A model generated the notes under the pieces. It was not told the origin of the DNA. It saw only the letters and a list, made by a program, of their open reading frames with translations, and searched no databases. From Paragordius varius (lineage: Eukaryota; Animalia; Nematomorpha): a stretch of 64,000 bases of DNA. The DNA lies in NCBI GenBank assembly GCA_964247055.1, contig OZ176053.1, forward strand, positions 4,588,001 to 4,652,000, in the 5' to 3' direction. Below are positions 7,301 through 64,000 of the stretch, one piece after another. The position numbers and the translations under genes were made by a program. Position 1 is the first letter of the stretch. The number at the start of each line of letters is the position of its first letter.

Positions 7301-7615
7301 CACTTCGATTCGAATTGGGGTATCTAAATACCCCAGACAATAGTTGAGTTGATTTTGCATTTTTTATATTACCTTATGCACACATGTCATGTTGGCTAAA
7401 TTTTTACCTTTAGCTTTTAGCTCTAAATAAGTAATATCAAGTATTTTTGAATGATTGTTTTTATATTTCGGTTGAATGTTGTTTAAGTGCAAACTTTTGC
7501 CATGATTTCAATTTATTCCATATTTTTTGAAATATTTAATTTTTAAACAAGGCTGGTGTATATATCCATCCCAATTCGAATCGAAGGACTGAAATGAATA
7601 TGTTGTTTCCAGGTG
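7301..7615 (+). mobile_element. piggyBac-like TTAA MITE family B, internally deleted copy (315 bp)
   Basis: Same ends as 32015-32599 (CACTTCGATTC.AATTGGGGTATCTAAATACCCC ... GTG|TTAA). The left TSD is degenerate (ATAA). Confidence 0.75.
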
Positions 7616-7709
7616 TTAAGTCTTTTAAAGATATGAAATTTTTTTATATTAATTGATTGTGGCGGCAGCGCTTTAAATGATAACCATGATTTTTTGAATT
7701 CATGGTGTC

Positions 7710-27349: not shown

Positions 27350-28148
27350 TTTTTTGAGAGTTATAATGTAGTAACAACTATATGTTATTATAGCTATGTA
27401 TTAAAACCATACTGGTATTGTGATATATTTGTATATTTATCTTAAATATAATATATTTATTGTATATTCAATATATATATTTAAACAAATCAAATATTCT
27501 CAATAAATGACAATCTTTATATAACTAGCGATACAAGATACTTTAATTTTTTGCTAAAATTTACAATTTGTGGACGGAAGAGTAAAAACTCTTTGATTAT
27601 TGAAATCATTTTTCAATATAACTCAATATTATTTTAGGTCAATTATTTAATAAAAATTCAGTCGCTCCACATTTTACTATATGTATTGTTATAACAAAAT
27701 GGCATGAGATTTAATTACAGTATGAGTAAGTATATATTGCTAGAAAGTTATTAATTATTGCGAAAAAGCCTATACAACAAAGAGCAGTATTATTGGCTTA
27801 TAGTTATTTTTTTCACATTTTATTATTATTTATTAATAATTCCTTGTTGCTTATGCTATTTGGCAATAATTAATAAATTTCTAGCAATATATACATGCTC
27901 ATACTGTATTTACGCCGTTTCCGACCTGCTTCAATATGCCTAAAACACTTTATAGTTAATATTTTAACCATATGCCTTTTATCAAAAATAGATCATCGAT
28001 CGGCCTTTTTTTATAAACAAATTAAATGCAAGCTGGTAATGTTTTTATAGTAAATTTCTAATATAAGAAAAATTTATTTATTAGTTTCAACGAAAAATTT
28101 AAAATTATGCACTAAATTTCCGATTTTGATTAGGTAATTATTACTTAA

Positions 28149-28700
28149 CATTTGGATACAACATATTCATTTCAGTCTTTCGATTCAAATTGGGATCGGT
28201 AGAGACTCCATGCCAGTTTAAAATTAAATATTTTAAAAAAATATGGAATGAATCGAAACCATGGCAAAAGTTTGCATTTATGTAGCATTAATGACCGAAT
28301 TATAAAAAAAATCATTTAAAAATACTTGATATTACTTATAAAGTAACACCCAAAGGTAAAATTTGAGTCAACATTACATGTGTGCATTAGCTAAATTTAA
28401 AATTAATACAAAATAAACCACTTTTTCTTTTTTTATCAATGTTAGATGTGATTCAAATAAAAAATTAGATTTAATTTAGCTTTAAAGTTAAATAAACACG
28501 ATATTTTGCAAAATGTCGTAAAATAAGCGTCGAAGTACTTTGATATTTTTTTAATATATTTTACTTAGATATTTTGGCTTTACCTAATTTTTACTTGGAT
28601 AGGATCATGAATATAATGAAAAAGCTTATCTTGCAGAGTTTTTTTAAATATCAACTTAATTATAGATGGGGCATTTAGATCCCCCTTTATGTCGAAGTAA
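28149..28700 (-). mobile_element. piggyBac-like MITE family B, decayed reverse copy
   Basis: TTAA|CATTTGGATACAACATATTCATTTCAGTCTTTCGATTCAAATTGGG at the left; a decayed GGGGCATTTAGATCCCCC..TCGAAG at about 28670-28700. Confidence 0.65.
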
Positions 28701-31900: not shown

Positions 31901-32014
31901 ACATAGGGTATAACATATAGAATATAGAACTAACTCTTATAAGTTCTTGCATAAGGCTAAGTTTGATATTAAATCACAATTTTATTTCTTCTATTGGGCT
32001 TAGTTACATCTTAA

Positions 32015-32599
32015 CACTTCGATTCAAATTGGGGTATCTAAATACCCCACACTAAATTTGAGTTAGGATTTTTAAAAAACTACTGAAAGTAACGGTCCCA
32101 ATTTATATTTATGCTTCTATCCTAATAAAAATTATATAAATAAGCCAAAATATCTAAATAAAATTTGGTTTTGAAAAAAAAATTTCATATCAAACTACTT
32201 CGACGCCATTTTTATTTTACAAAATTTTTGCAAAATATCGTCGTCATTTAATTTAAAGGGTAAAATTAAAGCTAATTTTATATTAAATTACATCTAACAT
32301 TGATAGAAATAAAAATAGAAAAAGCGGTTTATTTTGTATTATTTTTCAATTTTACCATTGCAGACATGTAACGGCTAAATTTTTATATTTCAGTTGTAGC
32401 TTAAAATTAGTAATATCAAATATTTTTAATTAAATTTTTTTTATATATTTCGGTTTATTAATGTTATATAAGTGCAAAATTTTGCCATGGTTTTGATTCC
32501 TTCCATATTTTTTAAAGACATTAATTTTAAAAAGGTCTGGGGTATTTAACTATCCCAATTTGAATCGAAGGATTAAAATGAATGTGTTGTATCCAAGTG
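32015..32599 (+). mobile_element. piggyBac-like TTAA MITE family B, full copy (585 bp)
   Basis: Flanked by TTAA on both sides (32011-14 and 32600-03). Terminal CACTT/AAGTG plus the subterminal inverted repeat TTCGATTCAAATTGGG.TA. Confidence 0.88.
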
Positions 32600-35500
32600 T
32601 TAAGATATCTAAGCAATCTAAATTTATTCTCTATCATATATGCAAACTTAGATTCTTTACCAAAAATGTAAACATAATTAATTAAATGTCTATATCTATA
32701 ACGTATCATTATATCCTTAAATGTAACCCCACCTTCAACGCAAAATGACGGCTGTCACTGAACCACCATGTATGGAAAAACAGCAAGGGACATCTTTTTG
32801 GACAGTGGCGACGTGGGTCTGCTACACCCTTTTCTTGATACACCTTGATAGTTATTAATATCAAACCGGTTATACCCCTGTGTCACGAACACCCTCTTTG
32901 TATATCCGTGTATATATTAGTTTAAAAAATTATGTTTATTTTGCATAAACTTTTCAGATTATTTTTTATAAATTATGAAAAAAACAGAATTCAAATTTTA
33001 CACGAGAAATTTTAAGAGTCATAGATTAATAGCCAAAATACGTGAGCCTTACAAATTTGTTACTCTTAATAATATCTGGCTATATAGTGATATTCTGTTT
33101 TTGTTGATGAATGCAATTAATGGATAATAATTTATAGGTAAACCAACACCAATATTTAAAAAAATTTAATCGTCTTCCTTTTTTACTTTAATGCCAGCAA
33201 GCTGCCCATGGATAAAAGATTGCATTAGTGTTTTATTTGAAATAAATGAGTTATTTGGCCTACTCTAATGCTCTGGAATTTGATATAAGTCGATACTTCA
33301 AGGTTGTTGTTTGTTACAAGTTGTTAAAATTGATTAAACCACTTTTTTTTACAAGTCTCTTGATCGTTTCATGGCCTCCTTGTTATCAGCTAAAATATCT
33401 TTTACATGATAATCGAATAATTATGGGGACATGACACAGTGACAATCACCGTTGTCTGTTTTTATTTACAAAGTTTTTAGCTTTCGTCATTTCACTCTTT
33501 TGTATGTATAATGGTACTTTTAGTCGGGCCTTACTATAAGCTATTTATGCTTTTCTGTAAATAGCTTCATATTTAAAAATCGTAAAATTAGAGAAAATTA
33601 TGGTAGATAATTTATTTGTGAAAGCTATATGCTTTATTCGAACATTATAAATAAAAAAAGTAATATTAATACTAAATTTTAATTTAAAAATATATCCCTT
33701 ACAAATTTTTGGACCCAGCTAAAATGGTCTGTTTTAAAATAAAAAACGTGCTGAGATTGCGCGATAACAATTTTGATGCCAAATGACATCAAAATATATT
33801 ATCAAAAAATGCATACATTGCTTAAAAACATGTCAGTAATTTTTTAAAATGAATTCGCTTTTTAAAGGTTGGATATGGTATCGCAACATTTTGAATTATA
33901 ACAACTCTTTTCGATGATGTTAGCATTTTATATCACCTTTAAAATTAATATAAAAATACGTTCATCTTTTTTTACAAAAATTTGAAAGCAAACAAACCTT
34001 ATAATTATTTGAGGTGATATAAATGTTAAGCATCATCGGCTTATATAGAAAATTTTTTAAAAAGCGTTTTATACCGTTTCCACCATTCTTCCAAATACCA
34101 CTAAGTACTCTACCACAAAATTTCGCCAAATTTTATTTGACTTTTTAATATCTTACCAGTGCGCATAAAAAACATCCTAATAAAACATATATATTATGTC
34201 AGATAAATGTATAAAAATTCTCATGGTGAATTTGGTTTCCTCACCAGATTATAAAAGATATAAACACGTTTCCGGTATCTGCTCTATATTAAAAAATGGC
34301 GAATTTCCCGAATATTTTGGTAATATTTTTTTATGGTGGAAGCTAAATGCTTCATTTAAAATATTATATAAAAAGCATAACAAATTTAAAAAATTTTAGA
34401 TGTGGGCGCCAAGTCCCAAAAGTTTTTGCCCAGATGCAAAATGCCGAGTTTTTTCGATATATTTATTAATATATGGTAGCTAGATTATGGGGAAAATGTA
34501 ATTTTTAAAAAATATATAGTTAGTTCAAAATTTAATGTTTAGCAAAATTTTATTGACACACTTTATACTATATTGAGGCATGATGGTAACGGTTTTAAAC
34601 GCTTTAAGATATTACACTTTACTATATAATTCAATGATGCCGAACGTTTTTATCACCTCACAATTTCATAAAATATTTCGTTCGCCTTCAATATGGTAAA
34701 TATAAATTGTTTTTTAAGAAACCACAATTTTAAGAAATTTTTGAGAATCCAATTTTTTTTGCGGTTACGGAATTAATATATTAAGAATATTTTTATGTGC
34801 CATGTTATTTAATATTAGCAGAGTTTTTCTATAAATTTATCCTCTTTTGTATCCACCCAATCAATAGATTAATTAGCCAAAAATTATCAAATTAACAATT
34901 TATAGCATTAACAAAGGTTTGAATTACATATAAAACCTAAATTTTGTATATAAATAGTTTCCAAAATAATTTTATCCATATTTTTAAATCTGTCAAGTGT
35001 GCCCTACACCACACTTGCAAAATCTTTAAGTTTTACTTGAACATATGATTTATTATCACCTCCTTATCAAGTTTTCTTGCTTGACTTAAGTCGTGTAATG
35101 TTAAATTTTTTTTATCACATGAAAGCAAGCCATGACTTGAAAAACTTGCAAGTCAAGTCAAAAAAATTTTTTATCACCCGACGCAATGTTTAGCATTATC
35201 GAATTATACATTAAGAAAGGCTGCTTAAAATTTTAAAGTGCATTTATACCATTCCCACCATGCTTAAAAATACATAAAACTCGTTTAACCAAAATTTTGT
35301 AATAAATTAAAATTTTAAGCGATACACCCAGGAAAAAACTTTTTCTATATAAACATTTGGCATATATTTAAAATTTTCACTCAATCTCGGCCCTTACGTC
35401 CTTATTTTAAAAGATGTCTATGAACGGGTCCCAAAATCTTAGACGCTCGGAGCACACATCTAAAATCCAAAATTAATTAAGCTATTGTTTTGCTTTTTAT

Positions 35501-38900: not shown

Positions 38901-39609
38901 ATCATTTTTTAACGTCAAAATAGATATTTGATGATTTTTTTCCCTTTGATCGCAGAACATTTTTGTGCGATTGGCGAAAAAAGTTTTATTTACCTTTTTA
39001 CCGACCAATAATTATTAAGAAAGTATTTGAATTTAAAAAATGACTTATTTTCTTCCGCGTTCGCTACAAGAGGTTTGACTATATTCTTGTTTAAGCCTGA
39101 TTTCAAATGTTACTTTGTTTCCAGATGAGACATAAGTTTTTTGAATTATATGTGCAGTAAAAATATATTATTTTTGTTCGCAAATAATCGGTTCATTTAT
39201 GATAATGATTGACTATTTATCTAAACATATCTTGCACTTAGTTATACTCCATATGTACTATTCTTTTTTGCTTAAGATCCCACTCAAAAAAGCTCAGGCT
39301 TGGTGTAACTCCAAAAATAATATCCCTTACTTTGAAACAAGTGCAAAATCAAGCACAAACGTTGATGATGCATTTTTAACCGTTTCTGGATCTGCTCTGG
39401 CCCGTGAAATTCGCTCCACGGCTGACATTTTTAGCTATAACTCAGGTCTGGGGGGTTATAGCGGCTTATCCAATAATCAAAATGCCCAAAAAACTTTAAT
39501 TGATGGCAGCTCAGGATCTAATCCTATTATTAAATTGGGTGAGAATACTAATAATATGAGTAGTGGTACAAATCAATCTCCTTTCAAAAAAATTTGTTCA
39601 TCTTGTTAA
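35913..39609 (+). CDS. RAB7: Ras-related protein Rab-7, 4 exons, 245 aa
   Basis: Exons 35913-35971, 35997-36123, 36182-36400, 39277-39609. Motifs [80 protein letters not shown] and YFETSAK. Confidence 0.97.
37081..38840 (-). mobile_element. Helitron composite in Rab7 intron 3: a 160-bp mini-Helitron (37081-37240) plus three tandem body units with 5' termini at 37784 and 38840
   Basis: CTAG at 37081-84, hairpin, G-run, and TC 5' ends at 37240, 37784 and 38840. A near-identical duplication with 544-bp period gives the twin ORFs at 37292 and 37836. Confidence 0.9.
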
Positions 39610-45356: not shown

Positions 45357-46771
45357 GCTTTCTAAATGAATGTATAATATACACCTTGATGCTTTTAACT
45401 TCAACTATATTTATAATTTATTTGTGGCCGTTGGCATTTTGGAGTAGTATCCGTAGAGCTTAAAATTGTTACATACTACTGAAAAGTTTTTGGTTAATTT
45501 AGATAAATCTCCTATCATAGAGAAAAAAACATAGATTTTTACAGTTTCTTAACTTATAGGGTCACAAATTTAAATAGCTGCTAAACTCAACCGAGCGAGC
45601 AGTTAACATGGAATTAATTTGCTTGTGAATCGTATTTTGCAACTTTCCAAAGCTCATTAAAATTTTCCACAATCAGACACTGTTTACAAAAAATAAACTG
45701 TTGAAATATATATTATGATAGAATAATGTATATTATTATAGTGCTTTCGGTTCTGGCCCTTATGATTGATTTATCACTTCGTTTCCTCTTTATTTTATGT
45801 TTGGATTTACATTTTGAAGCATTTTATCCCAGAGGATATTGTAGTTAACTACATTTATAGTTATCATAGTTTTAATTTAACTATCAAAAATTGCTCATAT
45901 ATTCGATAAAAAAGCATAACTTTTTACAGTTTTGTGACTTTTAGAGTCTAAAATTTTGACAGCTCTAAAACACGATTCAGACGAACAGGTGATGTTAAAA
46001 TCAAATATATCAAGTTTTGCTTGTAAAATGTAGCCTGGAAAGTACACTTTTTGCCTGTAATGACGATTTTAAAAAATTATGATAAAAAATGGCCGCAAAA
46101 AAGTTGGATATGAGGTTTTTACAATATACATTTTTCCAAAAAAAAATTTGTATAATGCGCCTAAGAGCCTAAAGAAAGTATATCATTAAATTCGGCCTAA
46201 TACCTTTAATACTTTTAAGAATATTCGAATTTGAAATCGCCCGGGGATATAAAAACCTCAAAGAAAGTTAGTCATCAAAAAATGATAAAATTTGCGCATA
46301 TTTTTTAAAAAATTGGTGGAAGCTAGAGGCTTCTTTCTGAAAAATTCCACTAAAAAATATCATAAAAAAGCAAAACAATATTTTCAAAAAAAAATTTTTT
46401 TTATAAGTGGTATCCAAAAATTCCAAATTTTTTGCTATTCCAAAATGGGCTAATCCTCATAACCGCAAAAATGCCGGGATAGCACGATAAAAATATTAAA
46501 TATACAAATTTTGATATAAACTAATAATATTTTGGAAAATTTATACTTTTTTTCAAAAATTTAATTTCTATCAAAATTTTGTTGAAGGTTCCTTCATATT
46601 GAGTCATGATGGAAACGTTTTAAAAACGCTTTAACAAATTATACAAAACTTTTACTATAAAATTCAATGATGATGAATATTTCTATAGCTTTATTATATT
46701 TAAATGTTTTGAAAAATTTCGGCGCCATTTTGTAAAAAACTCAATTTTATGTAATTTTGAATATATTTTAA

Positions 46772-47316
46772 CACTTCGATTCAAATTGGGGTATCTAAAT
46801 ACCCCAGACTAAATTTGAGTTTGGATTTATAAATAACTACTGAAGGAACCGGTTCAAATTTGAATTTATGCTTCTATTCTAATAAAAATTATATAAATAT
46901 TCCAAAATATCTTATTAAAATTTTGTTTTGAAGAAAAAGTTCCGTGTCAAACTACTTCGACGCCGTTTTTATTTTACAAAATTTTTGCAAAATATCGTCT
47001 CATTTAAATTACATCTAACATTGATAGAATTAGGAAGAGCGGTTTATCTTGTATTATTTTTTGATTTTATAATTTCACACATGTCACATTGACGAAATTT
47101 TTACCTTTCGGTTTCACCTTAAAATAAGTAATATCAAGTATTTTTGAATAAAGTTTTTTATATATTTCGGTTTATTGATGTTATATAAGTGCAAAATTTT
47201 GCCATGGTTTCGATTCCTTCCATACTTTTTAAAGTATTTGATTTTAAACAGGCCTGGGGTATCCAACTACCCCAATTTGAATCGAAGGACTAAAAAGAGT
47301 GTGTTGTATCCAAGTG
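46772..47316 (+). mobile_element. piggyBac-like MITE family B (545 bp), inserted into a family E repeat
   Basis: TTAA on both sides; same termini as 32015-32599. Confidence 0.88.
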
Positions 47317-50210
47317 TTAATCAAGTCTGACGTGATATTAGCGCCATAAAATTATATAGAAAAAGTGTTTAATAATGTCTTGCGTTTTTATACCATTTCC
47401 ATCATGCCTCAAAATAGTTTAAAGTACGTTTAAACAATTTTGCTAAAAATTTTTGAAAAATTATCCATTTATTAAAATTATTTTATAATTTTGCATATAA
47501 AATTTTTTTCCGCATTTGTGCAGCCCATTTAGGAAGAGCAAAAAATTTTGGGACTGTCGGATCACAAACTAAAATTTAAATGTTTTAAAAATATTATTTT
47601 GCTTTTTATATGTAGTTTATGATAATTTTTATTTTATGAATGAGCCTCTAGCTGTTACCAAAATCTATTTAAAAAATATAGCAAATTTTGCCATTTTCCG
47701 ATATGAAGCACTCCCAAAAGTTTAAATTATTTCTTAAATCGCTCATAACGGTGCGTACAAGGGGGTATAAAAAAGCTGATGGAATATATATATTGTGATA
47801 AGAAAATGTATCATTGTTATGGTGCTTTTGATTTGGCCCTTACCAGTGGTCGTAAGTGCCTCTTCTTAGAAAATGACAAAATGTGCATTTTTTAAATAAA
47901 TTTTTTCGGTGAAAGCTAAATGCTTTATTCCAAAAAACCACTAAAATATACCATAAACTATTTATAAGCACAGCAATATTTTTAAAAATTAATTTTTAGA
48001 TATGGGCTTTGATAGTCCCAAATTTTTTCGCTCTTCTAAAATGGGGTAGTTCTTTTAAAATAAAATCAAAAAATTTTTTAAATATATGCTAATTTTTGAC
48101 ATAAAAAAATATTTTAAAAATATATACTTTTTTAAAAAATTTAAAGCAAAATTTTGTTAAAGCGTACTTTATACTATTAGGGGTGTCCAACACAAATAGT
48201 TCTTTAAGAGCGATATTCTCGATCTCAAAAATCCGAAGAGCCACATTTGAATTAATATTAAGACATAAGTATTAAAATTGTTTATAAACATGTATAGATT
48301 TATTAATAAAATAACTAGTAAAGTTATTATAATATTGCTAAATTTGCTGTTAAATTGTACTAATATATGTAAAAACAAATTATTTGAGGAAATGCATAGA
48401 TAAAATAAAGTTAATTTTTGAAATGTATATGCCATTGATAAAAGCACAAATATAGAGTATATCATAATGAATTCTATTTGAAATGATAAATTTTTCACAA
48501 AAAACAACTTGAACTTACCCCACTTAAATTCCTGCTGAACTGTGTTTAACATGCAAATTTCAAATATATTTAATATATTAGAAACATATGTATGGGCTAC
48601 CGAGGAATAATTGTATTATTATAAAATCTGACGTCTAATAAAGATCTTAAACAATGAACTGCTTGTTTAAACTAGATTTGACATATTCCTTTTACAATGG
48701 CTCATGTGGTTAGAAATGTAGTTATTTTATATAATCATCTGCTTTAAAGCATAAACATTTTAAAGATCTATTAAATATTGATATCAAATTGGAGATATAA
48801 TTTACAATTAATGTTAACAAAAAATTTTATTCAATTAATTAAATTAATATTTTTCTATATCAGAGTAATAATAGAGAGGATTTGACGGATACAATAAGAT
48901 TATCAAAACTAAATAATTATCAAAAAGTTTACCAATTGTAAATATTTTCGAATACATAATTTATTAATCTAATAATGGGTGCTACATTAAAAATAAGGCT
49001 GTGTTTTCATATGGCTCTTTCAGTAAATAAATAAAAAAACATTTATCTTACGAATGCGTTATTTATAACTCCAATTATTGCTATATTAAAAATGGGACTA
49101 AGGGTTTCAGAAATATGGCCTAAATAATTACCAAAAATAATTTACAAGTGGCAATATTTCTATACATATTCAGATTGTTAAAAAAATAAATGATTTAAGG
49201 AATATGATATGAAATATAATAAAAAATATTATAAATAAAATTTTATGCAAATCAATTCAAAATTTTTACTTTTTAAAAAAATTTTAAACATTTTATACCG
49301 CTACTCAAAAATTAAACTTTTTGCAAAAAAAAATTTTTTTCAATTGTTTTAAAGAGCCACTCAAATTTTCAAAGAGCCATAAGTGGCACCGGAACCACTT
49401 ATTGGACACTCCTGATTTAGAGGCCTTATGGAAACGGTAACGCTCAATATAAAAACACTTTCTCTATATAATTCGATGATGATGAACATTTCTATAGCTC
49501 CAGGATTTTAATTTAAAAATAAAAATTTTCGTGAACATATGCAATGTTATTAGACTTAGTTATGTAGAGAGAAGGGACATATTGAAGCATACAAAGCAAT
49601 GTTATTATTTCTCTCATTTAAGTCAATTATTAATAACACTCATATAAAATATAATTTGTTTGAAATTATATTGACAAAATTAATTATATTACAATACAAC
49701 TTCATCATTCAATATGTGTCAAGTGTGTATATAATTAAATAAATCATTACGCTATATTGCATAAATATTTGACTCAACAGAATGAATTTTAATCTTCCAT
49801 TTTAAGCAACAACGAATTAATATTAATAATTTTAATTTTTCAAATATTAACCTTAACCAAATTTCATACAAGAATAATTTATTTCTAAAAAATATTTAAG
49901 AATGATTGTTGTAAACCTGATCAAAAAATAATTGCCAACATAAAAGATGAGGTCATGTATAAATAATAATTGCGGAGATCTTATTTTTGATTCAGTTTAC
50001 TATTGCATTGAATACTAGATAAGATTAGATAAAACATTGAATAAATCTATACATTTTCTGGTTTTAAACAATTTATAAATTATATGTAGATTTTGAGAAA
50101 AGGATTAAAAATAGTTTTTAAACGACAGGAAATGCGGCATTTTTCTGTGAATAATCTTCAAATTGCATAATTTTTTACCATTTAATAACATATTAATATA
50201 CTTACTTCCA

Positions 50211-52802: not shown

Positions 52803-55800
52803 TTAATATATAAATTGATGGTGAAACATATCATACAACAAATCTTTATGAATACAAACGGAATTAAGCGCTATGTAATTGTCGCAGCACCGTTGAAATC
52901 TTGGACATTTGTATATATCGGTAACCTTGGGCTGAAAACTAAAATAATGTATTTTTAATTACACAGTAAAGTTTAAAAAGATAGGTATAAATATGCAGAG
53001 TAAATGTCAAAGGTTTTTAATGAAGAGCCGCAATTTATAAAGTACATTATATTTTTATATTTTTTAACCTACGGTGTCGTCCAATATGCATTTAAAGGTC
53101 TCTCACACCTATTTATAAATAATATTTATGTTGCCTATCTAAAAAACATTGTTTAAAAATATGTTAAACTTTTATAGCTCACGACATTTTAATAAAAGAC
53201 TCTGACTTTTTTAACATATTTTGCCCTTTACAAACTTTTTAAATTAAAAAATTATATAAAGGTTTTTGAGGTAATGTGATGACAATTATATTTTGTAACT
53301 TACGCATCCAACGTTTTAAAACATTCATACAGATGATTAGGATCAGTTTCGCATGCATATGGATTACAATCCCTATATTGTGTTTCTATAGGTTTGCAAG
53401 GACAATTTCTAATCATAAATAGCAGAAAATCTTTTGCATATTGTTACAAAAAAGTATATTACATCAAAAAAATTAAATATATTGAAAAGACAGATCATAT
53501 TGTATAAAAAATACATTAATTAAATGATACTAATTTTTTACTGGGAATCGTAACATAGAAACATACATTTCCGTATACGTTTTTGAACCCCACAACCTCC
53601 ACAAGGCTCACTGCAAGGCCCCCAATTTGACCAAGCCGTATATAAACCCTGTTCCTTTGTTTTTTCGGCAAAGCATGAATTGGGTACTATTTTTAAAAAA
53701 ATACCGAATTACATACACAGTCACACCTTTTTTGTGCAGGCTTTGTGAGGTGACCCTTTTTACCTCTTTTAGTAATATGTGGATTTTTTGGCTTTTTTGC
53801 GAAACTCTCGTGGTCTTTTTGGTTTTTAAATTGGTCTTTTATTCGTCTGCTATTTTTATATTAAATAGCCATTTTTGTAAATATGTGGAATACATTTTAA
53901 CCTTATTTTGTGGAGTATTTCTTTACAATGAGGTATTATAACTTAAAATTAATTTATACTAGATAAAATATTTCCCACATAAAAAATTTAGAAAAAATTG
54001 TTGAAACGGTTTTAACCCCAGAAAAATTACGCATTAATGGCAACTTATGAAGGCTTATACAAAAGTTTTATACAAGAGCACGATACTTAAATTTCAAATA
54101 ATAATTCACAGTCAAAAGATATATGTAAAATTATTTTTTATAATATTTTTCTGTATAAGGGAATAAATTTTTAAATAATTTAATGTTTTAATCAGTCCTT
54201 ACATATAAGTTTGCGGCAGAATGGAGGTGTGGTCGTGCGTTATTTGTCCTATACGTTTATTTGAAAAATTAATTTGTGCGAATTCTTTAACCAAAAATAG
54301 TTTTTTGCATTTTTACGCTGATCAATAAAATTCATTATAATATTTGAAAAATGTCTTTTTTGAATTTATGTTACGCGATCCTCTGTACCGAACAAAAAGA
54401 GGTTTGACTGTATTTTATTGTTATAAACATTTGTTAATTATTATATTTATTTTTAAATAAATCAAACTTAATTTTTTGCCACATATTGTGTTAATTCCAT
54501 TATTGATCGAGTAATTAATATATTGATTACAAATAAAAAAATATATGATATCCTGGCCATCATTATATAATATTTAGTTGCTTGTAAAATATATTTAAAG
54601 ATGTAACTAGAAATTCAGTTTTAATTAAAATATAAGTAAAGCGTAGTACCTAAATTGACCGTTCCTTGAAATCCTATTTTTGGGGGAAACGTTAGGCTTG
54701 TGTTTCCCTCTAACCGACTTAATTGATTCGTTTGAAATAGTAAGGACATGAATTCGCCATCAGATTCTAGATTGAGGATGACTGGTAAATATCCACATAA
54801 TCTGACAAGATATTTTAACAAATATAATATAATTTTTTACTAAACCTTATAAAGCCCTTTATCAAGGAATTACAAAAAATAAGATCATTCATCTCGCCGA
54901 GTGTTATAAAATCCTATTTGATAATTTATTATATAATTGTCTTGACAGTTTATTATAACGTTCATTTTTAAAATCTAAAAACCAACTTTTGCATCCAAAA
55001 TTCTTTATTAACAAATTATTGCCAATTTTTAACTAATATATTTGCTATCAAACTAACCAAGTAACATAGGTGACAGTTCGAAAATATAAATATAAAGGAT
55101 AAAAATTGGGAAATAAATATTAAAGTTAACTTATAAAATTACCTCAAGCCGGTCAGGGATTGATCTGTTCGATATTTAATTTCCAACCATTGTATGCATT
55201 GTGCATTATAACCGGCACGAAGGATATCAAAGTTGGTAGCATTAATCTCAATTCTTAGTCTTCCAACAGTTCCGTTTTTACATTGTGCCTGTATAGTAAA
55301 ATTTTAATTTTTAAATAAAATTAATGCAATAAAAATGTTAAATTTTAACATATAAAATAAGATTAAATAATAATTATGAGACAATATGCAGAAAATCTTA
55401 CAAACTAAATAAATAAATTACAACCCTAATGACCTTTTATTGAAAATGTAATGTAAAGAGATTTAATAAAAATAAACGGCTGCATTATTAAAAATTATAG
55501 GCTGCATCGCTGTCGATCATTCAGGGATATGTACAGCTGTCCAACACACGGGCCGCGTTTCAAATACATAATTTTACGATATCTAAGAAAAATATATTTT
55601 TTTTAACAAAATTACCGATAAATAATTTTGCATTTCGGCAATGAACTAGCAAAAAATGTTAAAATGAATAGTTGTTTTGACCGTCTTAGGTTTCTAATCT
55701 AATAAAATATTCGTTAATGCTCATATATTTTCGAGATGCTCGCCGGTTTTTTTGATCCACAAATGCATCCCTTGAAGCCATTTGTGTTGGTGACCTCCTG

Positions 55801-58800
55801 ATGTAAACATTTATTTCTTTATATGTGTATAAAATTAGCGGTTATATCCAAATTACGCTTACTAATGCGAAAAACAGGATTTGATTAACAGTATCAATAA
55901 TGTAAAAAAACAATAACTTTAAGAACCCAAAAACAATTATCCCCCGGACTATAAGGCTGTTCCGGCCATCCAGGTGAATTGATAAATATAGATGGACTAT
56001 CTTCATTAATTTCCATAATTTGGTTTCGAGTCTTGCATGACCCTACATAGCAAAATTTATTTGAGATACAAATATCACATGATTGACGAATTTAAATATA
56101 AGTTTATATATATATATATATAGTTAACCTTTTTTGGCGATCGTATGTATTATACATTTTTATGATATATTTATTAAATCATTAAAACAAAAACTAAAAT
56201 CTGTTGTCATACTGGAACTCTCTTGAACTGATTGACAAGAAGATCCAGAGAAACCCGAAGGACATATACATTCCCTACAATTTGAAGGATCGGGATAACC
56301 ACCGTTTTGACATTGGGTTGATGCCATTTTGCAAGAGTCTAAAAATGTATCAATGTGAATTATATTAACCCTTTGTAACTCATATATTTTTACTTTAATA
56401 ATGAATTGGGATTAGGTCCCACCCACCAGTTTTAAATGCATACCTGAGCGCGAGCGCTCATGAAAATAACCAGTTAAAAACTTCAAATCTAATATAAAGT
56501 AATGGTACACCTAAATTTACTGGTAAAAAATGGTCAAAATTTTATGCAGTTTCATGATTTGTTACTATAAATCTATCCAAACATTATTAAATTAACCAAT
56601 TCGAACAGTTATATTCCTGTTGTTTGGCTTAGGCAACAAATATTTAACGTTTGCTTTGATAAGGACTGCTTAAGGCCATGAAAATGATTGCATTTATAAA
56701 ATGGTGAGCCTGTTTTTACAAGCAAGATCCCAACCTAAGTGACAAATACAATAATTCTATGCACCCTAGAATATACAGCTGTGCTATTTTTTTGCGATAA
56801 AAAATTTAAATATAATTATTATAAAATCAGTAGCAAATTACCTTGGCAATAGTAATTGTTTAAAGATTGCAAGTCATAAAAACTCGGTTCTACACTTGAT
56901 CCTATCGTACTTAGATATTGTAAATCCTTAGGGATGAATACGGGACCTCGTTGATTGGGTATTTTTAACTCCTATTAAATTATGATTATAGAAATTTTTT
57001 ATCATAACAATTCAAGTTATTTAAAGATTCGATACACATATATTGTTAAATCAAATAAATTTTATAGCAATAGCGTAGTGGTAATAATTTTTATAAATAT
57101 ATGACCATTTATAGAGTAAATGTAAAAATGGAAAAAGCGATGTTACATAATTACATTAGGATTAAATTGCATAAGAGATCCATATTCATAAGGTGTATTA
57201 TACAGATTAGCTTCTTTCATAGTTTCCAGCAAATAACGAGATGCAGGTGTGATCTGAAAAAGTAAAAAAATTATATTAATTAGTTAACCTGCTTATAAGA
57301 TTAAGAATTCAATAAATAAATAATTAAAGATAAGCTTAACAATTTCGTTTCCCTATTTAACGGTAATTTTAAGTGTATTACGCTATTAACACTTCGATTC
57401 AAATTGGGGTATCTAAATACCCCAGACTAAATCAAAATTTAAATTTTTTAAAAACTACTGAAGGAAACGGTCCCAATTTAAATTTATGCTTCTATCCTGA
57501 TAAATATTATAAATATTTGCCATAATATCTTGATAAAATTTTGTTTTGAAAAAAAAGTTCCATCTCAAACTACTTCGACGCCATTTTTATTTTACAAAAA
57601 TTTTGCAAAATATCGTCTTCATTTAATATTAAGGGTAAAACTTAGGCTAATTTTTTATATAAATTACATCTAACATTGATGGAAATAGAAAAAGCGGTTT
57701 ATTTTGTAATATTTTTTAATTTTACAATTTGACACATGTCACGTTGACTAAATTTTTACCTTTCAGTTTTAGCTCAAAATAAGTAATATCAAGTATTTTT
57801 GAATAAATTTTTTTATATATTTCGGTTTATTAATGTTATATAAGTGCAAAATTTGCCATGGTTTCGATTGCTTCCATACTTTCTAAAATATTTGATTTTA
57901 AACAGGCCTGGGGTATCCAACTACCCCAATTTGAATCGAAGGACTAAAATGAGTGTGTTGTATCCAAGTGTTAAAATTACCGTATTATATTCTTATTTAA
58001 ATTGTTTATATATTAAATTTCTACAGTCAAACCTGTTAATTGCACGCTGCCACATAAATAATTACAAAATTGATTCAAATATCATGTCACTTATTATTGA
58101 TCGGCATAAATTTGGAAAAATGCCTTTTGCCCTGAAAATAAAACCACATAAAATACGGGCAAAAATATAAAGACAAATATTTTTTTCTAATAGAAAACCA
58201 TACTTTTTTAAATTCCATTTTTTAAAATATAACTCATTGTTTCGAATTGCAATTTATAAAATTGATAAGTATATTGGTTATACGATCAATTCTATATAAA
58301 ACAATTGCAAATGAAAAGCTTTTATGGGAAAAATTAAAGTTCGAAAAAGTATGGTTGTCTTCTGGAAAGAGTCTTTGTATTTTAACGTTTTGTCCGTTAT
58401 AATTCCAGTTTTTACTGTTATGAGTGCAATTATAGAAGTGTTAAGCTCTACATTAATGAAGTAAAGGTACATATACCATAATTATGAGCAGTTATAAAAA
58501 TATGAGTTTTATTAATTTTGTTTGTAGTTATGGGTTTGTTAAAATCGCCTAATCGCCACAAACTCTTTGCATAGAAAAATGCTTTAATTGCATTTTTTTA
58601 AATAACATTAGGTAATATTTTATCTACCCTCATTCATTTTGGAAAAAGTGAAATTACTTGATCGTAACTGAAACGTCACCTAAGGTTTGACTATATATTA
58701 TATATAAATATATACATATAAAATGCCTTATATAACCTTTTGCTCATCAATGATTATGTATTTGTTCCGATCAGGACGTTGGACTTCGTAAATTAAGCCT

Positions 58801-60050
58801 AAAGTTCGCCCAATCAACATGGCCAATGATCGAACCTAAAACACATTTTTAAATCCAGGGTATTAAAAATCAAACAATCTTGATTACCTGATAATATGAT
58901 CAAACAAATTTTATAGTAAAATGGGAAAAATTACATTAAGGCATTCAGGGCCCAAAACTATGTATTGCGCTCTACCTCTCCGTCCCAAATCGGATCGACA
59001 TCTATATGTGTTTGTTAAACATTGTTTACCATTTATGTTTCAAAATATAACTTAATGACAAAAATATTAAAATTATACAGATAAAATGTAAAAACTAAAA
59101 GAGATATATTTTTAATAATGCAACCAGAGCTTTACCTAATTTTAATATGACTTATTGGGTCGCAAAACAGAAGTTAAGATAAATTGGTAACGCTCTCAAT
59201 TGTATTTATAGTTGCTCTAGGAAAAATTAGGGTTAAAATTTTTGTCTTTTAGTTTTTATGTTTTGACTGTATAATTTCAATTTTTATTGGAATTTATACA
59301 AAAAAAATTGAATAAATACAGAAAATGAAATACGTTTCTATATTTATGTTTGAATTGTTTCCATTAACATTATTAGCAGATAATAAGGAAGTTGAAGTGA
59401 AAACTATGTAGTCATCTTCGGTCGGATTTAGGACGTATTTAAAACTGATGCAACTTTTCCGAGACCATGAATCAAGAGCCTCTTCAATAATTTCTGTTGT
59501 GTTTGGTTCTGAATTTTATTAAGCGCCAATCATCACATAATATATTATATAAAGCAAAATTGTTTTTAATTTGATATATTTTTGCATGTTATAAATAATC
59601 GTGTCTAAGAAAAACCTTAATTCTACTAAAGATTGTTTTAGATTTAGCATTTAAATATAAAGGAGATATCATTTAAGGTTGGAAATATAATCAGCACTTA
59701 ATTATATTACTATCACCTTTATCTTTTGGTTAGTTTTTCACAGTAAATCAATTAATATAGCTCACCATTTCTCAATTTACGGCGAAAACATTTCAAAAAA
59801 TAAATTTTAATTGTTTTAAGAAATGCATAATGCAGGGAATTTTACGTGTATCCAATAATCCCGAATAAGTATAAATTATTGGGAAATTTCGCCATTTTAA
59901 TTCTTGATCCCGTCCTGCCCATATTGCTCTTTTGATTCGATAATCTTGGGCATTTATGTTTACCTTAAAATACGATACAATACAAAAAAATATAAAACAC
60001 ATATAATAAAAATAAATTAGTATAAATTTACGAAGTGTAGAATTATCCAA
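52803..60050 (-). CDS. Astacin (M12A)-EGF-CUB-TSP1 secreted protein of the nematode NAS/DPY-31 architecture, catalytically dead
   Basis: Exons 60050-59846, 59508-59334, 59001-58935, 58835-58737, 57253-57155, 56971-56842, 56338-56213, 56042-55918, 55288-55143, 54801-54650, uncertain linker exons about 54410-53717, then about 53686-53563, 53408-53331, 53108-53073, 52938-52803. Motifs RIKRAI..KW, WSRKSCISF, RPDR, PYEYGSLMQF, PKD..TIGS..PSFYD..LN.YYC, EGF CQNGGYPDPSNC.EC.CPSGFSG..C, CUB SPGWP..Y.PG.NC.W, and TSP1 WSNWGPCSEPCGGCG. Confidence 0.88.
57390..57970 (+). mobile_element. piggyBac-like MITE family B (581 bp) in an astacin-like gene intron
   Basis: TTAA on both sides (57386-89 and 57971-74); same termini. 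Confidence 0.9.
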
Positions 60051-60659
60051 ATTAGAGATGTTTTAATCCAAAACATTTTAAAATTATAAAAAATATTTTT
60101 TACAATTATGCTATAAAAAAATTGACCTAAAACCTTTAAAGAATTACAAATAAGATTATGCATTGGGAGCAATGTACAATCATAAAATATCAATTTGAAT
60201 TTAATTAGTTTTTTTTAAAAAAAATTCCCTTATTTTAGCCTATATAAAATTGATTTTATTAATTGTACCTTATTTTTCAAATGCTCTTATTATTGAATTA
60301 AACCACGAAAGGTAAGTTTATTGGTTTATTTAATGCATAAAAATGAAAAGAATAGTCAGATATAAAATATTTCCGCTACATTGATAAAAGCGATTCAATG
60401 AGAGTATATGTAATTAAATTATAAAATGAATATAATTTTTTTAATATAATATTGTTTCAGCCGTAACTCGGTTCAAAAATTACTTAATATATATATTTTC
60501 AAGTTTTCCAATTAAGAACCTTTACGAATGCCAATCAAATGGTTTATTATCAGAAATACTTTTGGGATAATAATATATTAATCAAATTTTACCGTTTTTG
60601 CTAAGAAATTAAATATTTATTTTATTCATAATATACATCGGCTTATATACATCATCTCA

Positions 60660-61060
60660 AGTAATATATATAAGTTTTGCCAAAAAAACTGATTGGCTTT
60701 TGCGACAATTTGTAAGCCATTTTTCAAAATTGGGTTTGGATGCGAAAGAATAACCCATAAGCGATTTTAAGGTGTCTTTCACTGGGTTTGCTGTGTGAGA
60801 TGAAGCATTGTCATGTAGGAAAATCACTTTGCCATGTTTTCTGGCCTACGGTCGTTTTTCGCTTAATGTATGATTAAAATAATCATTTTTGGCGAGAGCG
60901 TCGTGCATTAACGGTTTCACGTTTTCAACAGTTAATAATTAACAATATCGTTCTGGTTCCATAGAGTCAAAACACGACATTATCTTACCATTGGTATTAG
61001 TGGGCCGGTTAGGTGAAAGCCACGTGTTCATTTTGAACCAAAATATAGTTTTATATACTT
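60660..61060 (-). mobile_element. Degraded mariner transposase fragment
   Basis: The minus strand encodes RKHGKVIFLHDNASSHTANPVKDTLKSL (mariner catalytic HDNA region), followed by FEKWL..FWQN. The WEVL..YSPDLAPSD segment is deleted and upstream sequence is frameshifted. Confidence 0.85.
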
Positions 61061-61609
61061 TTTAAATGTAATTTAGTATTATAAACGCAAAAACTGAGAT
61101 TGCACCATAAAAAATGTAAACAAAATATATTTTTTACAACGCATACTTTTTAGAGAGCGTTAAATATAAAATTGTTCTCAATTCGTGTCGACTGCGGAAT
61201 ATTTTAGCTCAAATTGATATATTGATATTATATATTTGTGTTGTCAAATCTCGGCCGATTAGCTTATAAATATAAGCATATTTTTCGGTTTCGCAAATGT
61301 AAAACTTTGGTAACAATTATAATATTATAACATAGTTTGGTTATAAAAAGTAAAATGATTAAATAAATGTTTTCTGATAGAATGTATCTCTCAAAGTGCT
61401 TTTGTTTCGGTCAAAAACATATTTACTATCTATTTATTAATTATTACCGACAACTTTGGTATAATGAAAAATTATCTATTTGTTCAAATAAGTTTATTAA
61501 AGGCCTAAATCTTTTTATAAATGAGAGGTGGTACTTAAGACATTAAACATATAAAAAAAGTTATTAACGTCCAGTATGGTGGAAATATTAAAAAACTATA
61601 GTTAATTAA

Positions 61610-62179
61610 CACTTGGATACAACACATTCATTTTAGTCCTTCAATTCAAATTGGGGTAGTTGGATACCCCAGCGGGTGTAAAATTAAATTCTTTAAAAAA
61701 TATGGAAGCAATCGAAGGCAAAATTTTGCATTTATATAACATTAATAAACCGAAATATTTAAAAAAATTTATTCAAAAATACTTGATATTACTTATTTTA
61801 AGCTAAAACCGGAAGGAAAAAATTTAGTCAACGTGACATATGTGCAATGATAAAATTGAAAAATAATACAAAATATACCGCTTTCCTTATTTCTATTTCT
61901 ATCAATGTTAGATGTAATTTAAATAAAAAATTAGCTATAATTTTACTCTTAAAATTAAATGAAGACGATATTTTGCAAAAATTTTGTAAAATAAAATTAG
62001 TCTGACATGGAACTTTTTTTTCAAAACTAAATTTTGTTTAGATATTTTCGCATATTTATATAATTTTATTAAGATAGAAGCATAAATTTAAATTTGGAAC
62101 GTTTCCTTCAGTAGTTTTATAAAAATCCTAATTTATATTTATTCTGGGGTATTTAGATACCCCAATTTAAATCGAAGTG
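61610..62179 (-). mobile_element. piggyBac-like MITE family B (570 bp), reverse copy
   Basis: TTAA|CACTTGGATACAACAC ... ATCGAAGTG|TAAC; the right TSD is imperfect. Confidence 0.85.
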
Positions 62180-64000
62180 TAACACAATTTGGACATTTTT
62201 TTGAAAAATTATTTTGCTTAAATTTAGCATAAAAAGTATTAAAATATCGCAATCACGGTTTGACTACGACGGTTTGCATATTATGTTTCAAAATCTTTTG
62301 GTTGAAGATAAATTCTTCTAAAAATAAAATACATCCCTAACTATAAAAATCAAAATACTTGCACATAATTTTAGTTTTCATGGTAAGATCCTTAAGTGTC
62401 ATATTTTTGAACACAGCTAAAAAGCCTTGTTTACTTATTATCAACACATAGAGTCGAGATGGCGCAATTAGAGATAAGAATATTTTTTTTATTCTCAATT
62501 TGTTGAAGCTTTAATTGTTTTTTAAATCATGAGTATAAAATTGGTTTAAACGGAATTTCTACATATTTAATAATACCTCATTTTTTTGATTTAAATAAAT
62601 TTACCTTCAAATATAAGTTAGAAAGCGATTTATTCATCAAAATTTTGAGGTGAGGTATTTTAGCTGCTTCTAATTGTATAGAAAAAGCGTATTTAGTTAA
62701 ATATGTTTTTATAACGTTACCGGCATGTTTCAAAATACCATCAAACTTGCTTGAACTAAATTTGAAAAAAAATTATTTGAATATATAATATGCTTTTTTA
62801 ATTTTTTATGATACCATAATATTAACAAAAGAGAAATAATCAGGATTATGGTTTAAGTTTGAGCTTACGAGATATTTAAGAAAGATATTTTTATTTATAA
62901 CAATTCCATATCAAAAAATCGCAAAATTTGCCCATATTATCTTAATAAATTTTTTCGATGAATGCGCTTAATTATAAAATATCGCTAAAATATTGTATAT
63001 GAAAAAACAATTTTTATCAAATTTTAAATTTAGGATGTGGGCTCAAAAGTCTCAAAATTTTGGACCCGTCTAAAATGCGTTTTTAATAAATTAAACGTCG
63101 AAATGCCGATATTGAGGGATAAAAATTTTAGATATGTGCCAAAGTTTGACATTAAAAGTTTTTTAATAGAGAATTATTTAGGGGTATCGAGTTTTATGGT
63201 TTTCTGAAGCACGATAGAAAGTATATAAATAACTCTAAGATATTATAATAACCCTACTACCATATAATCCGATGAGAATATTTCTATAAGCTCGGATCTT
63301 TGATTAAAATATTTGTTTGGGTAAAAATTTAAATACACATTTTTGTTAAAAACACAATTTATATTAAGTTTTAATAGGTATAATTTAGAAAAACTATTTT
63401 TATACAGTTCACACTATGCTTCAATTTAAGATAATTGGTTTATAAAAATTTGCCATAAATTATATTTTTAAGCTAAATATTTTTTTCTTCGGAAAAAATT
63501 TTTTTTGATGTCATAATTAATAAGCATATATAAAAATTTTGTCGCGCTATCTCAGCTTTTTTGCTTTTAAAAAGAATTTTCTCAGACGGATCAGAAATTT
63601 TGTAACTTTCAGAGCTCCCATCTAAAAAAAAAAATTTTGTAAAATATTGTTTTGCTCTTTTATGTAGTTTATGAATATTAGAGATATTTTTTGAAATAAA
63701 TAAATAAATTTTACCACAAAAACTTTATATAACAAAATGTGCGCAAATTATGTCCTTTTCAGATTTAAAAAGTTACAAAATTGTAAATATCTTTTATAAG
63801 GGCAACCAAAAGCACCATGATAATCTTGATAAAGTTTCCCATCAGAATAAATATTTTTCATCATGTTTTTTATACCACAATTCTTTTTTTAATTGACATA
63901 ACGTGGCGGATCGCTACGTTCCGATACAGCGCAATTACTGAAAAAGTGTTCACTCTTTAAATCCTACGCACCAAATATAACCAATTATGTTACTGTCTAT

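What the first reader, a model, noticed from the sequence alone, without database searches (positions are those of the whole stretch)
57155..58835. Catalytically dead astacin: all zinc ligands and the catalytic Glu replaced, fold retained
The astacin signature HExxHxxGxxHExxRxDR reads M-L-I-G-R-T-L-G-L-I-Y-E-V-Q-R-P-D-R (58820-58767): His to Met, Glu to Leu, His to Arg, His to Tyr. The Met-turn SxMHY reads SLMQF, losing the Tyr switch. The G, E, R.DR, Met-turn Met, all four domain cysteines, and intact EGF, CUB and TSP1 modules are kept across about 15 clean exons. This points to a selected non-enzymatic secreted pseudo-protease rather than a pseudogene. The architecture matches nematode NAS/DPY-31 cuticle-collagen and moulting proteases, so a decoy, scaffold or cuticle/host-interaction role is plausible (inference).
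Basis: partly seen in the sequence, partly recalled or inferred. Interest (0 to 1): 0.78.

Follow-up and report, generated by a model that had tools for sequence, protein, structure and literature searches.

The report
Catalytically dead astacin gene, hairworm-like genome
An intact 12-exon gene encodes a secreted astacin-type protein whose zinc-binding and catalytic residues are all replaced, so it is very probably a protease look-alike kept for binding rather than cutting, although no RNA or close relatives could be found to prove that it is used.

Summary
On the minus strand, 60002-53300, I built a 12-exon, 502-residue gene. All 11 introns are GT-AG, the phases agree and there is no internal stop. 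The domain order is signal peptide, RIKR site, astacin domain, EGF, CUB, TSP1, as in nematode NAS subgroup V.

Exon 4 reads MLIGRTLGLIYEVQRPDR where astacins have HExxHxxGxxHExxRxDR. Exon 5 reads SLMQF where they have SIMHY. The family-specific Glu, RPDR, the Met-turn Met and the four catalytic-domain cysteines are kept. No FxGDI prodomain is present, and no HExxH exon exists anywhere in the 64 kb.

The six lost residues need at least 10 base changes in 18 bases. In a neutral-decay simulation, only 4% of copies keep the reading frame and splice sites at 2% divergence, and 0.03% at 5%. Catalysis was therefore lost long ago and the gene was kept afterwards.

Not shown:
- Expression: three probable RNA runs held no contig here.
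- Orthologues: none in 1.84 billion representative proteins.
- The fold: the spliced model has no reference, so it was not submitted.

The nearest hit is an independently inactivated Strongyloides astacin family (xxIGRALGMIPE), so dead astacins are not unique. The scan noted a second dead astacin elsewhere in this genome, which I could not test.

Verdict: a real, probably selected pseudo-protease of moderate interest.

The parts
59846..60002 (-). Exon 1: ATG, predicted signal peptide (residues 1-19), a 6-residue linker ending in RIKR, and the mature N-terminus AIW...IIYTY
   Evidence: An in-frame stop lies upstream with no acceptor between it and the ATG. Residues 2-12 have mean Kyte-Doolittle hydropathy 2.5. 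No FxGD-type prodomain motif occurs on the minus strand of the window.
59334..59508 (-). Exon 2: astacin domain with the first cysteine (KSCISF), ending in an Asn-rich insertion of about 17 residues
   Evidence: Pfam Astacin profile 16-55; splice sites and phase; alignment.
58935..59001 (-). Exon 3: astacin domain with the second and third cysteines (equivalent to the C64-C84 pair of crayfish astacin)
   Evidence: Pfam Astacin profile 51-78.
58737..58835 (-). Exon 4 (99 nt, phase 0/0): active-site helix exon
   Evidence: Pfam Astacin profile 86-112; alignment A1.
58767..58820 (-). Dead zinc motif MLIGRTLGLIYEVQRPDR in place of HExxHxxGxxHExxRxDR
   Evidence: Codons ATG, TTG, CGA and TAC need at least 3, 2, 2 and 1 base changes from His, Glu, His and His codons.
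57155..57253 (-). Exon 5 (99 nt, phase 0/0): region of the lower subdomain containing the Met-turn
   Evidence: Pfam Astacin profile 120-146; alignment A2.
57164..57178 (-). Met-turn SLMQF in place of SIMHY: Met kept, zinc-ligand Tyr changed to Phe, His changed to Gln
56842..56971 (-). Exon 6: end of the astacin domain with the fourth cysteine (NNYYC)
   Evidence: Pfam Astacin profile 155-189.
56213..56338 (-). Exon 7: EGF-like module with six cysteines
   Evidence: Pfam EGF_2 at 17.7 bits, EGF at 15.6 bits, both below cut-off; cysteine positions.
55918..56042 (-). Exon 8: start of the CUB domain (SPGWPEQPYSPGDNCFW)
   Evidence: PDB phmmer hits to PCPE-1 CUB2 (E 0.0017), cubilin and neuropilin-1/2 CUB domains; no Pfam hit.
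55143..55288 (-). Exon 9: middle of the CUB domain
   Evidence: Phase-consistent GT-AG exon. Assigned to CUB by position and cysteine pattern only; no tool hit.
54650..54801 (-). Exon 10: end of the CUB domain (LCG...GFQGTV)
   Evidence: no tool hit. The donor was chosen among three phase-compatible options.
53563..53686 (-). Exon 11: first half of TSP1 (WSNWGPCSEPCGG)
   Evidence: Pfam TSP_1 at 25.5 bits, above the 21.6 cut-off. The donor was chosen by retention of the conserved Cys.
53300..53408 (-). Exon 12: second half of TSP1, a 16-residue tail and the TAA stop
57386..57975 (.). MITE-like repeat of about 600 nt with inverted ends of about 80 nt, inside intron 4; not part of the coding sequence
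   Evidence: Six copies in the window at 75-87% identity. Summed contig depth reaches 27,000 in run X5.

Best explanation
This is an intact gene for a secreted, non-catalytic homologue of astacin metalloproteases (a pseudo-protease) with the nematode NAS subgroup V layout: astacin, EGF, CUB, TSP1. Shown: the three zinc histidines, the general-base glutamate and the Met-turn tyrosine are replaced by Met, Arg, Tyr, Leu and Phe, so canonical zinc hydrolysis is not possible. The fold-defining residues, the reading frame and all the splice sites are kept. The usual latency prodomain (FxGDI) is absent. Inferred: the protein is processed at RIKR, and its new N-terminus docks onto the retained family-specific Glu, as in active astacins. 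It then works by binding rather than cutting. It would use the disabled cleft together with the CUB and TSP1 exosites to hold cuticle or matrix precursors such as procollagens. It could act as a natural dominant-negative (substrate trap) against active astacin paralogues, or as a PCPE-like enhancer or scaffold.
For: - Gene model: 12 exons, 11 GT-AG introns, consistent phases, 502 codons and no stop. The other two frames of the same exons hold 30 and 43 stops. Exon GC is 37% (42/42/28 by codon position) against 25% in the introns.
- Family: colinear Pfam Astacin hits on exons 2-6, TSP_1 above cut-off, EGF hits, CUB hits in the PDB.
- Motif mapping: gap-free alignments to active domains, at 29-32% identity over about 177 residues, with four cysteines, Glu, RPDR and Met kept.
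- No rescue exon: there is no intact HExxH (the one match spans a stop codon) and no paralogous exon anywhere in 64 kb.
- Age against integrity: at least 10 base changes in the 18 bases of the six lost codons. Under AT-biased neutral substitution, an intact frame, start and 22 splice dinucleotides survive with probability 0.21 at 1% divergence, 0.044 at 2% and 0.0003 at 5%.
- Precedent: Strongyloides papillosus and S. venezuelensis keep a small family of dead astacins with Arg at the same second-His position. Dead ADAMs keep the Met-turn and repeatedly carry Tyr at the third His (PMC11266112).
- Prodomain: no FxGD-like motif on the minus strand and only a 6-residue linker. Astacin prodomains normally span 34-486 residues and share FXGDI (PMC9848320).
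Against: - No transcript evidence: three probable RNA runs of the same species label hold no contig on 54100-60090. This is not proof of silence.
- No orthologue or paralogue could be read, so there is no dN/dS and no phylogeny.
- The simulation shows long past maintenance, not present function. A loss of constraint within roughly the last 1-2% of divergence cannot be excluded.
- The six catalytic codons may have changed faster than neutral, which would weaken the age estimate.
- Some splice choices are not unique (end of exon 2, exons 10/11 and 11/12).
- The CUB assignment is weak.
- The fold was not predicted.
- The binding mechanism is inference from domain content and from what is known of dominant-negative tolloids and of PCPE-1.
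Confidence: 0.68

Rival explanations
1. It is a recently decayed or silent relic. The gene lost its use not long ago, is no longer expressed, and simply has not yet collected a stop or a splice-site mutation.
For: No RNA contig in the three probable RNA runs. No annotated relative in the protein collections. A low-complexity Asn-rich insertion in exon 2 and a large repeat-filled intron 4. The simulation still allows about 1% neutral divergence (P = 0.21).
Against: All 502 codons, the start codon and all 22 splice dinucleotides are intact. The structural residues are kept while exactly the catalytic ones are gone. Codon-position GC keeps a coding pattern. The catalytic loss itself is old (at least 10 of 18 bases changed), so the gene survived a long time without catalysis.
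Confidence: 0.14
2. The gene model is wrong at the critical point. The real mRNA skips exon 4 or exon 5, or takes a catalytic exon from elsewhere, so the protein is either an active enzyme or lacks the active-site helix.
For: Exons 4 and 5 are each 99 nt in phase 0/0, so either could be skipped in frame. An earlier unchecked scan note (s1-305396) proposes long-range splicing between astacin copies elsewhere in this genome. No RNA was available to confirm the junctions.
Against: No intact HExxH in any frame of the 64 kb and no second astacin-like exon. Exon 4 sits exactly at Pfam positions 86-112 between colinear neighbours. The Met-turn exon is degenerate in the same sense, which would not be expected if a live catalytic exon were spliced in.
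Confidence: 0.08
3. It is still a hydrolase with a non-canonical active site or another metal.
For: The cleft-forming framework, the Met-turn Met and the Glu after the third position are kept.
Against: All three His ligands, the Tyr ligand and the general-base Glu are replaced by Met, Arg, Tyr, Phe and Leu. The latency prodomain that active astacins need is missing.
Confidence: 0.03

Closest known systems
Nematode astacins of subgroup V (C. elegans NAS-33 to NAS-38, including HCH-1/NAS-34, DPY-31/NAS-35, NAS-36 and NAS-37)
   Same: Same domain order: signal peptide, astacin domain, one EGF, one CUB, one C-terminal TSP1 (PMC2824743). Same basic cleavage site before an Ala-Ile N-terminus, and the same four-cysteine catalytic domain.
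   Different: The zinc motif, catalytic Glu and Met-turn Tyr are all replaced, and no prodomain is present. Orthology to any particular NAS was not tested because no NAS sequence could be obtained. The host genome is probably a hairworm, not a nematode; that comes from earlier scan notes and was not tested here.
Strongyloides papillosus and S. venezuelensis 'Metalloendopeptidase' family (UniProt A0A0N5CH95, A0A0K0FEJ5 and relatives)
   Same: They are astacin homologues with the zinc motif replaced (xxIGRALGMIPE), Arg at the second His position, the Met-turn Met kept (SIMLV), RPDR kept, and EGF and CUB-like regions following.
   Different: They are only 23-26% identical to this catalytic domain, less than active astacins are (29-32%), so the inactivation was independent. 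They have lost the second and third cysteines and have no TSP1. Their third His is Pro or Ser, not Tyr.
Pseudo-protease ADAMs (ADAM2, 7, 11, 18, 22, 23, 29, 32; C. elegans UNC-71)
   Same: They are metzincin-clan proteins with the HExxHxxGxxH residues substituted but the Met-turn kept, and they work through protein-protein binding. Tyr at the third His recurs (ADAM2, 18 and 32 read ..TYD or ..SYD) (PMC11266112).
   Different: They belong to a different subfamily (M12B adamalysins), are membrane-anchored and have disintegrin domains. No astacin (M12A) pseudo-protease is listed in that review.
PCPE-1 (procollagen C-proteinase enhancer) and dominant-negative tolloid/BMP-1 forms
   Same: They are non-catalytic, CUB-bearing secreted proteins that bind the substrates of astacin-family procollagen and chordin proteinases, and so enhance or block cleavage (established knowledge). 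The exon 8 CUB segment matches PCPE-1 CUB2 best.
   Different: This is an analogy of mechanism only. PCPE-1 has no protease-like domain. No binding partner is known here.

Membership tests
Astacin peptidases (MEROPS M12A, Pfam PF01400), as defined in PMC9848320 | Catalytic-domain homology of about 200 residues | tested here: met
   Five colinear exon hits cover profile positions 16-189. Identity to active domains is 29-32%. Each exon alone is below the gathering score, and the joined protein was not scanned.
Astacin peptidases (MEROPS M12A, Pfam PF01400), as defined in PMC9848320 | Zinc motif HExxHxxGxxH with the general-base Glu | tested here: not met
   It reads MLIGRTLGLIY; only the Gly is kept.
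Astacin peptidases (MEROPS M12A, Pfam PF01400), as defined in PMC9848320 | Family-specific Glu followed by xxRxDRD | tested here: met
   It reads EVQRPDRN; the last Asp is Asn.
Astacin peptidases (MEROPS M12A, Pfam PF01400), as defined in PMC9848320 | SIMHY Met-turn with the zinc-binding Tyr | tested here: not met
   It reads SLMQF: Ser and Met are kept, His and Tyr are lost.
Astacin peptidases (MEROPS M12A, Pfam PF01400), as defined in PMC9848320 | Prodomain with the zinc-blocking Asp (FXGDI) | tested here: not met
   Only a 6-residue linker lies between the predicted signal peptide and RIKR, and no FxGD-like motif occurs on the minus strand of the window. The start codon is not confirmed by RNA.
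Astacin peptidases (MEROPS M12A, Pfam PF01400), as defined in PMC9848320 | Two conserved disulfides (C42-C198 and C64-C84 of crayfish astacin) | tested here: met
   There are exactly four cysteines in the mature domain, aligned with those of active domains. The bonding itself is inferred.
Nematode astacin subgroup V (NAS-33 to NAS-38) | Astacin + EGF + CUB + TSP1 in this order | tested here: met
   TSP1 is above cut-off, EGF is below cut-off, and CUB rests on PDB hits to one exon plus the cysteine pattern.
Nematode astacin subgroup V (NAS-33 to NAS-38) | Groups with NAS-33 to NAS-38 in a catalytic-domain phylogeny | not tested
   No NAS sequence could be fetched. Exon-length queries cannot reach full-length kin in the word search, and the one exhaustive search returned only four proteins.
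Pseudo-metallopeptidases (inactive metzincin homologues) | Catalytic and metal-binding residues substituted while the fold determinants (Met-turn Met, cysteines) are kept | tested here: met
   The pattern is as described for dead ADAMs (PMC11266112).
Pseudo-metallopeptidases (inactive metzincin homologues) | The gene is maintained by selection after the loss of catalysis | tested here: inconclusive
   Intact gene and neutral-decay simulation argue for it. There is no dN/dS and no orthologue.
Pseudo-metallopeptidases (inactive metzincin homologues) | Expressed as a protein without peptidase activity | not testable with these tools
   No RNA contig in runs X9-X11. Activity needs the bench.

The most novel reading that the evidence does not exclude
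Hairworms carry an old, selected family of pseudo-astacins: this gene plus at least the paralogue that the scan noted elsewhere with QLIGRALGVIY. The family lost zinc binding before the genes duplicated. Its members act as non-catalytic regulators of cuticle or matrix processing, or as secreted factors at the host interface. The same His-to-Arg replacement at the second zinc ligand arose independently in Strongyloides, which points to a preferred way of filling the empty metal site with a fixed positive charge.
Probability: 0.3. Interest if true: 0.62.

Novelty: new variant of a known kind. Interest (0 to 1): 0.46.

Why it matters
Pseudo-proteases are well studied among ADAMs and carboxypeptidases. 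The astacin branch, however, is usually surveyed with filters that demand an intact zinc motif (PMC9848320), so its dead members go unseen. The 2024 review of pseudo-metallopeptidases lists none.

A dead astacin with the full NAS subgroup V layout would be a natural experiment. It asks what the CUB, TSP1 and cleft surfaces of cuticle-processing astacins bind when cutting is removed.

It would also add astacin-family genes to Nematomorpha, a phylum for which the 2023 survey retrieved no astacins. The recurrence of Arg at the second His in two independent lineages is a small but testable structural point.

Tried and rejected
- phmmer of single exons against the PDB. Exon 4 hit only diguanylate cyclases by chance, and exons 6 and 10 hit nothing. 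Single dead exons are too short and too diverged.
With exon 2 in metagenomes, 600 pattern matches were found and none was confirmed.
- A degenerate DNA pattern for IGR[TA]LGxIxExxRPDR in metagenome contigs: no match.
- Aligning all exons as separate rows to a Strongyloides scaffold, to build a profile. MAFFT scattered the exons, the alignment (A3) was meaningless and it was not used.
- A Rab7 exon of the window as a probe for the source organism: only generic Rab7 fragments came back, so it gave no taxonomic signal.
- Reads: the three probable RNA runs gave nothing. For run X5 (a second organism label), the listed differences were swamped by the intron-4 repeat, so exon against intron divergence could not be counted.
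- A tiny intron inside the Asn-rich part of exon 2: rejected because the only GT..AG pair (31 nt) breaks the frame.
- Shared ancestry of the dead state with the Strongyloides family: rejected on identity.
- Rfam on the whole window: nothing.
- The spliced 502-residue model has no reference. It was therefore not sent to any search, family-scan or folding tool. It was used only inside scripts.
Full report
**What is there**

The window is AT-rich (27.5% GC) and has spliceosomal introns. On the minus strand between 60002 and 53300 I assembled a 12-exon gene from stop-free segments and their splice sites.
- Every one of the 11 introns begins with GT and ends with AG, and the phases fit across all junctions.
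- The coding sequence is 1509 nt (502 codons plus TAA) and has no internal stop.
- The other two frames of the same exons hold 30 and 43 stops. Exon GC is 37% (42/42/28 by codon position) against 25% in the introns.
- A few junctions have phase-compatible alternatives: the end of exon 2, exons 10/11 and exons 11/12. I chose by splice consensus and by retention of conserved cysteines. None of these choices touches the astacin motif exons.

**Family and domains (searched exon by exon, by reference)**

- Astacin: exons 2 to 6 hit Pfam Astacin colinearly at profile positions 16-55, 51-78, 86-112, 120-146 and 155-189. Each hit is below the 22.5-bit cut-off on its own; together they come to about 83 bits.
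- EGF: exon 7 gives EGF-type hits below cut-off and has six cysteines.
- TSP1: exon 11 passes the TSP_1 cut-off (25.5 against 21.6 bits).
- CUB: Pfam finds nothing in exons 8-10 taken singly. Exon 8 does match the CUB domains of PCPE-1 (E 0.0017), cubilin and neuropilins in the PDB, and the four canonical CUB cysteines are present.

The order astacin-EGF-CUB-TSP1 is the definition of C. elegans subgroup V, nas-33 to nas-38 (PMC2824743).

The joined protein has no reference, so I did not send it to any search, family-scan or folding tool. It was used only inside scripts.

**The dead site**

| Position in active astacins | Residue here |
|---|---|
| First zinc His | Met |
| General-base Glu | Leu |
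| Second zinc His | Arg |
| Third zinc His | Tyr |
| His of SIMHY | Gln |
| Zinc-ligand Tyr of SIMHY | Phe |

The following are kept:
- the motif Gly;
- the family-specific Glu that pairs with the mature N-terminus;
- RPDR;
- the Met-turn Met;
- the basic site RIKR before an Ala-Ile N-terminus;
- exactly four cysteines, aligned with the two conserved disulfides (roles as described in PMC9848320).

The prodomain is missing. Only six residues lie between the predicted signal peptide and RIKR, and no FxGD-like motif occurs on this strand of the window. Astacin prodomains normally span 34-486 residues and share FXGDI.

**Could a live exon rescue it?**

No intact HExxH occurs in any of the six frames of the 64 kb; the one regex match runs through a stop codon. 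A tblastn of the model against the window finds no second astacin-like exon. Exons 4 and 5 are both 99 nt in phase 0/0, so in-frame skipping is formally possible. Skipping would remove the motif, not restore it.

**Selected gene or pseudogene?**

No orthologue could be read, so dN/dS is not available. I compared the age of the lesion with the integrity of the gene instead.
- The six lost residues need at least 10 base changes in 18 bases (codons ATG, TTG, CGA, TAC, CAA, TTT). That is near-saturation divergence at those sites.
- I let the coding sequence and its 22 splice dinucleotides drift under the intron base composition, with substitutions only.
- The frame, start codon and splice sites all survived in 21% of trials at 1% divergence, 4.4% at 2% and 0.03% at 5%.

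The gene has therefore been kept intact for far longer than neutrality allows since catalysis was lost. This shows past selection for a non-catalytic role. It does not exclude a very recent loss of use.

**Expression**

Eight runs hold the locus, none of them on record as RNA. Five further runs of the same species label are probably RNA and hold next to none of its sampled words. Three of those, laid on 54100-60090, gave no contig. The tool warns that this is no proof of absence. Expression is untested.

A run under a second organism label (X5) holds about 40% of the words. It also holds single-copy-depth contigs over exons 1, 2, 3, 8 and 10, so a close relative carries the locus. The listed differences were dominated by the intron-4 repeat and could not be used to compare exons with introns.

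**Relatives**

An exhaustive HMMER search of 1.84 billion representative proteins with exon 4 gave four hits at E up to 0.001.
- The best hit is Strongyloides papillosus A0A0N5CH95, named 'Metalloendopeptidase'. It belongs to a small family in S. papillosus and S. venezuelensis.
- That family reads xxIGRALGMIPE and SIMLV, followed by EGF and CUB-like regions.
- These proteins are only 23-26% identical to the present catalytic domain, whereas active astacins are 29-32% identical. They have also lost the second and third cysteines.
- The two dead lineages therefore arose independently, and Arg at the second His is convergent.
- Two of the other three hits are active astacins and one is spurious.
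- No close orthologue exists in the collection, and two metagenome scans were blank.

**Literature**

The 2023 astacin survey accepted only sequences with an intact motif and a prodomain, and it retrieved none from Nematomorpha (PMC9848320). The 2024 review of pseudo-metallopeptidases lists only ADAMs within M12. It notes that dead ADAMs keep the Met-turn, and several carry Tyr at the third His, as here (PMC11266112). From my own knowledge, not checked here, MEROPS has a bin for M12A non-peptidase homologues.

**Earlier scan notes**

Earlier follow-ups on this genome call it a horsehair worm. I did not confirm this; my one attempt, with a Rab7 exon, was uninformative.

The scan also noted another dead astacin in a different piece of this genome (QLIGRALGVIY), a possible long-range splice between astacin copies, and a dead ADAMTS-like gene. 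These are unchecked leads. If the paralogue is real, the shared Leu, Arg and Tyr would place the loss before the duplication.

**How it most likely works**

- Shown: the protein cannot use the canonical zinc mechanism, yet it keeps the astacin framework, a secretion signal, a basic processing site and three binding modules.
- Inferred: it is secreted and trimmed at RIKR, and it folds like a mature astacin.
- Inferred: it then binds the kind of substrates that subgroup V enzymes cut, such as cuticle collagen precursors. It could act as a substrate trap competing with active paralogues, or as a PCPE-like presenter or scaffold.
- The loss of the latency prodomain fits a protein that no longer needs to be held inactive.

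I put 0.68 on 'maintained non-catalytic gene', and much less on any particular partner.

**Verdict**

This is a new variant of a known kind: a pseudo-metzincin in the astacin branch with the subgroup V layout. Its interest is moderate because pseudo-proteases are common, Strongyloides already has dead astacins, and expression and orthologues are missing.

Noticed in passing
window 57386-57975, with further copies near 7298-7619, 28145-28698, 32011-32606, 46751-47320 and 61606-62180: A MITE-like element of about 600 nt with inverted ends of about 80 nt. There are six copies in the window at 75-87% identity. Summed contig depth reaches 27,000 in a run of a second organism label, so it is a very high-copy repeat of this lineage.
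   Followed up: partly
window 60660-60845 (minus): A stop-free segment reading VIFLHDNASSHTANPV..., which looks like a remnant of a mariner/Tc1-type transposase, just upstream of the gene's first exon. This was read by eye only.
   Followed up: no
window 58737-58835 and 57155-57253: The zinc-motif exon and the Met-turn exon are both exactly 99 nt and both in phase 0/0, so either could be skipped without breaking the frame.
   Followed up: no
window 59336-59390 (minus): An Asn-rich low-complexity insertion of about 17 residues (LLSANNVNGNNSNINIE) in the loop before the second cysteine of the astacin domain. It is absent from the active and the Strongyloides domains aligned.
   Followed up: partly
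P0001 (Strongyloides papillosus A0A0N5CH95): The public model repeats a segment of about 60 residues, including the dead motif, twice in tandem, whereas its 381-residue relatives have it once. This is probably a gene-model or assembly duplication. The whole family is auto-named 'Metalloendopeptidase' although the zinc motif is gone.
   Followed up: partly
window 54100-60090 in run X5: A run under a different organism label holds about 40% of the locus's 31-letter words. Some of its contigs are identical to the window and others differ by 4-7% (for example, a 14-base deletion at 59038 in intron 2). It is either a close relative or a mixed sample.
   Followed up: partly
window 39289-39606 (plus): The last exon of a Rab7-like GTPase carries an unusually long Ser/Asn/Gly-rich tail before the CSSC end. 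No database protein shared that tail.
   Followed up: partly
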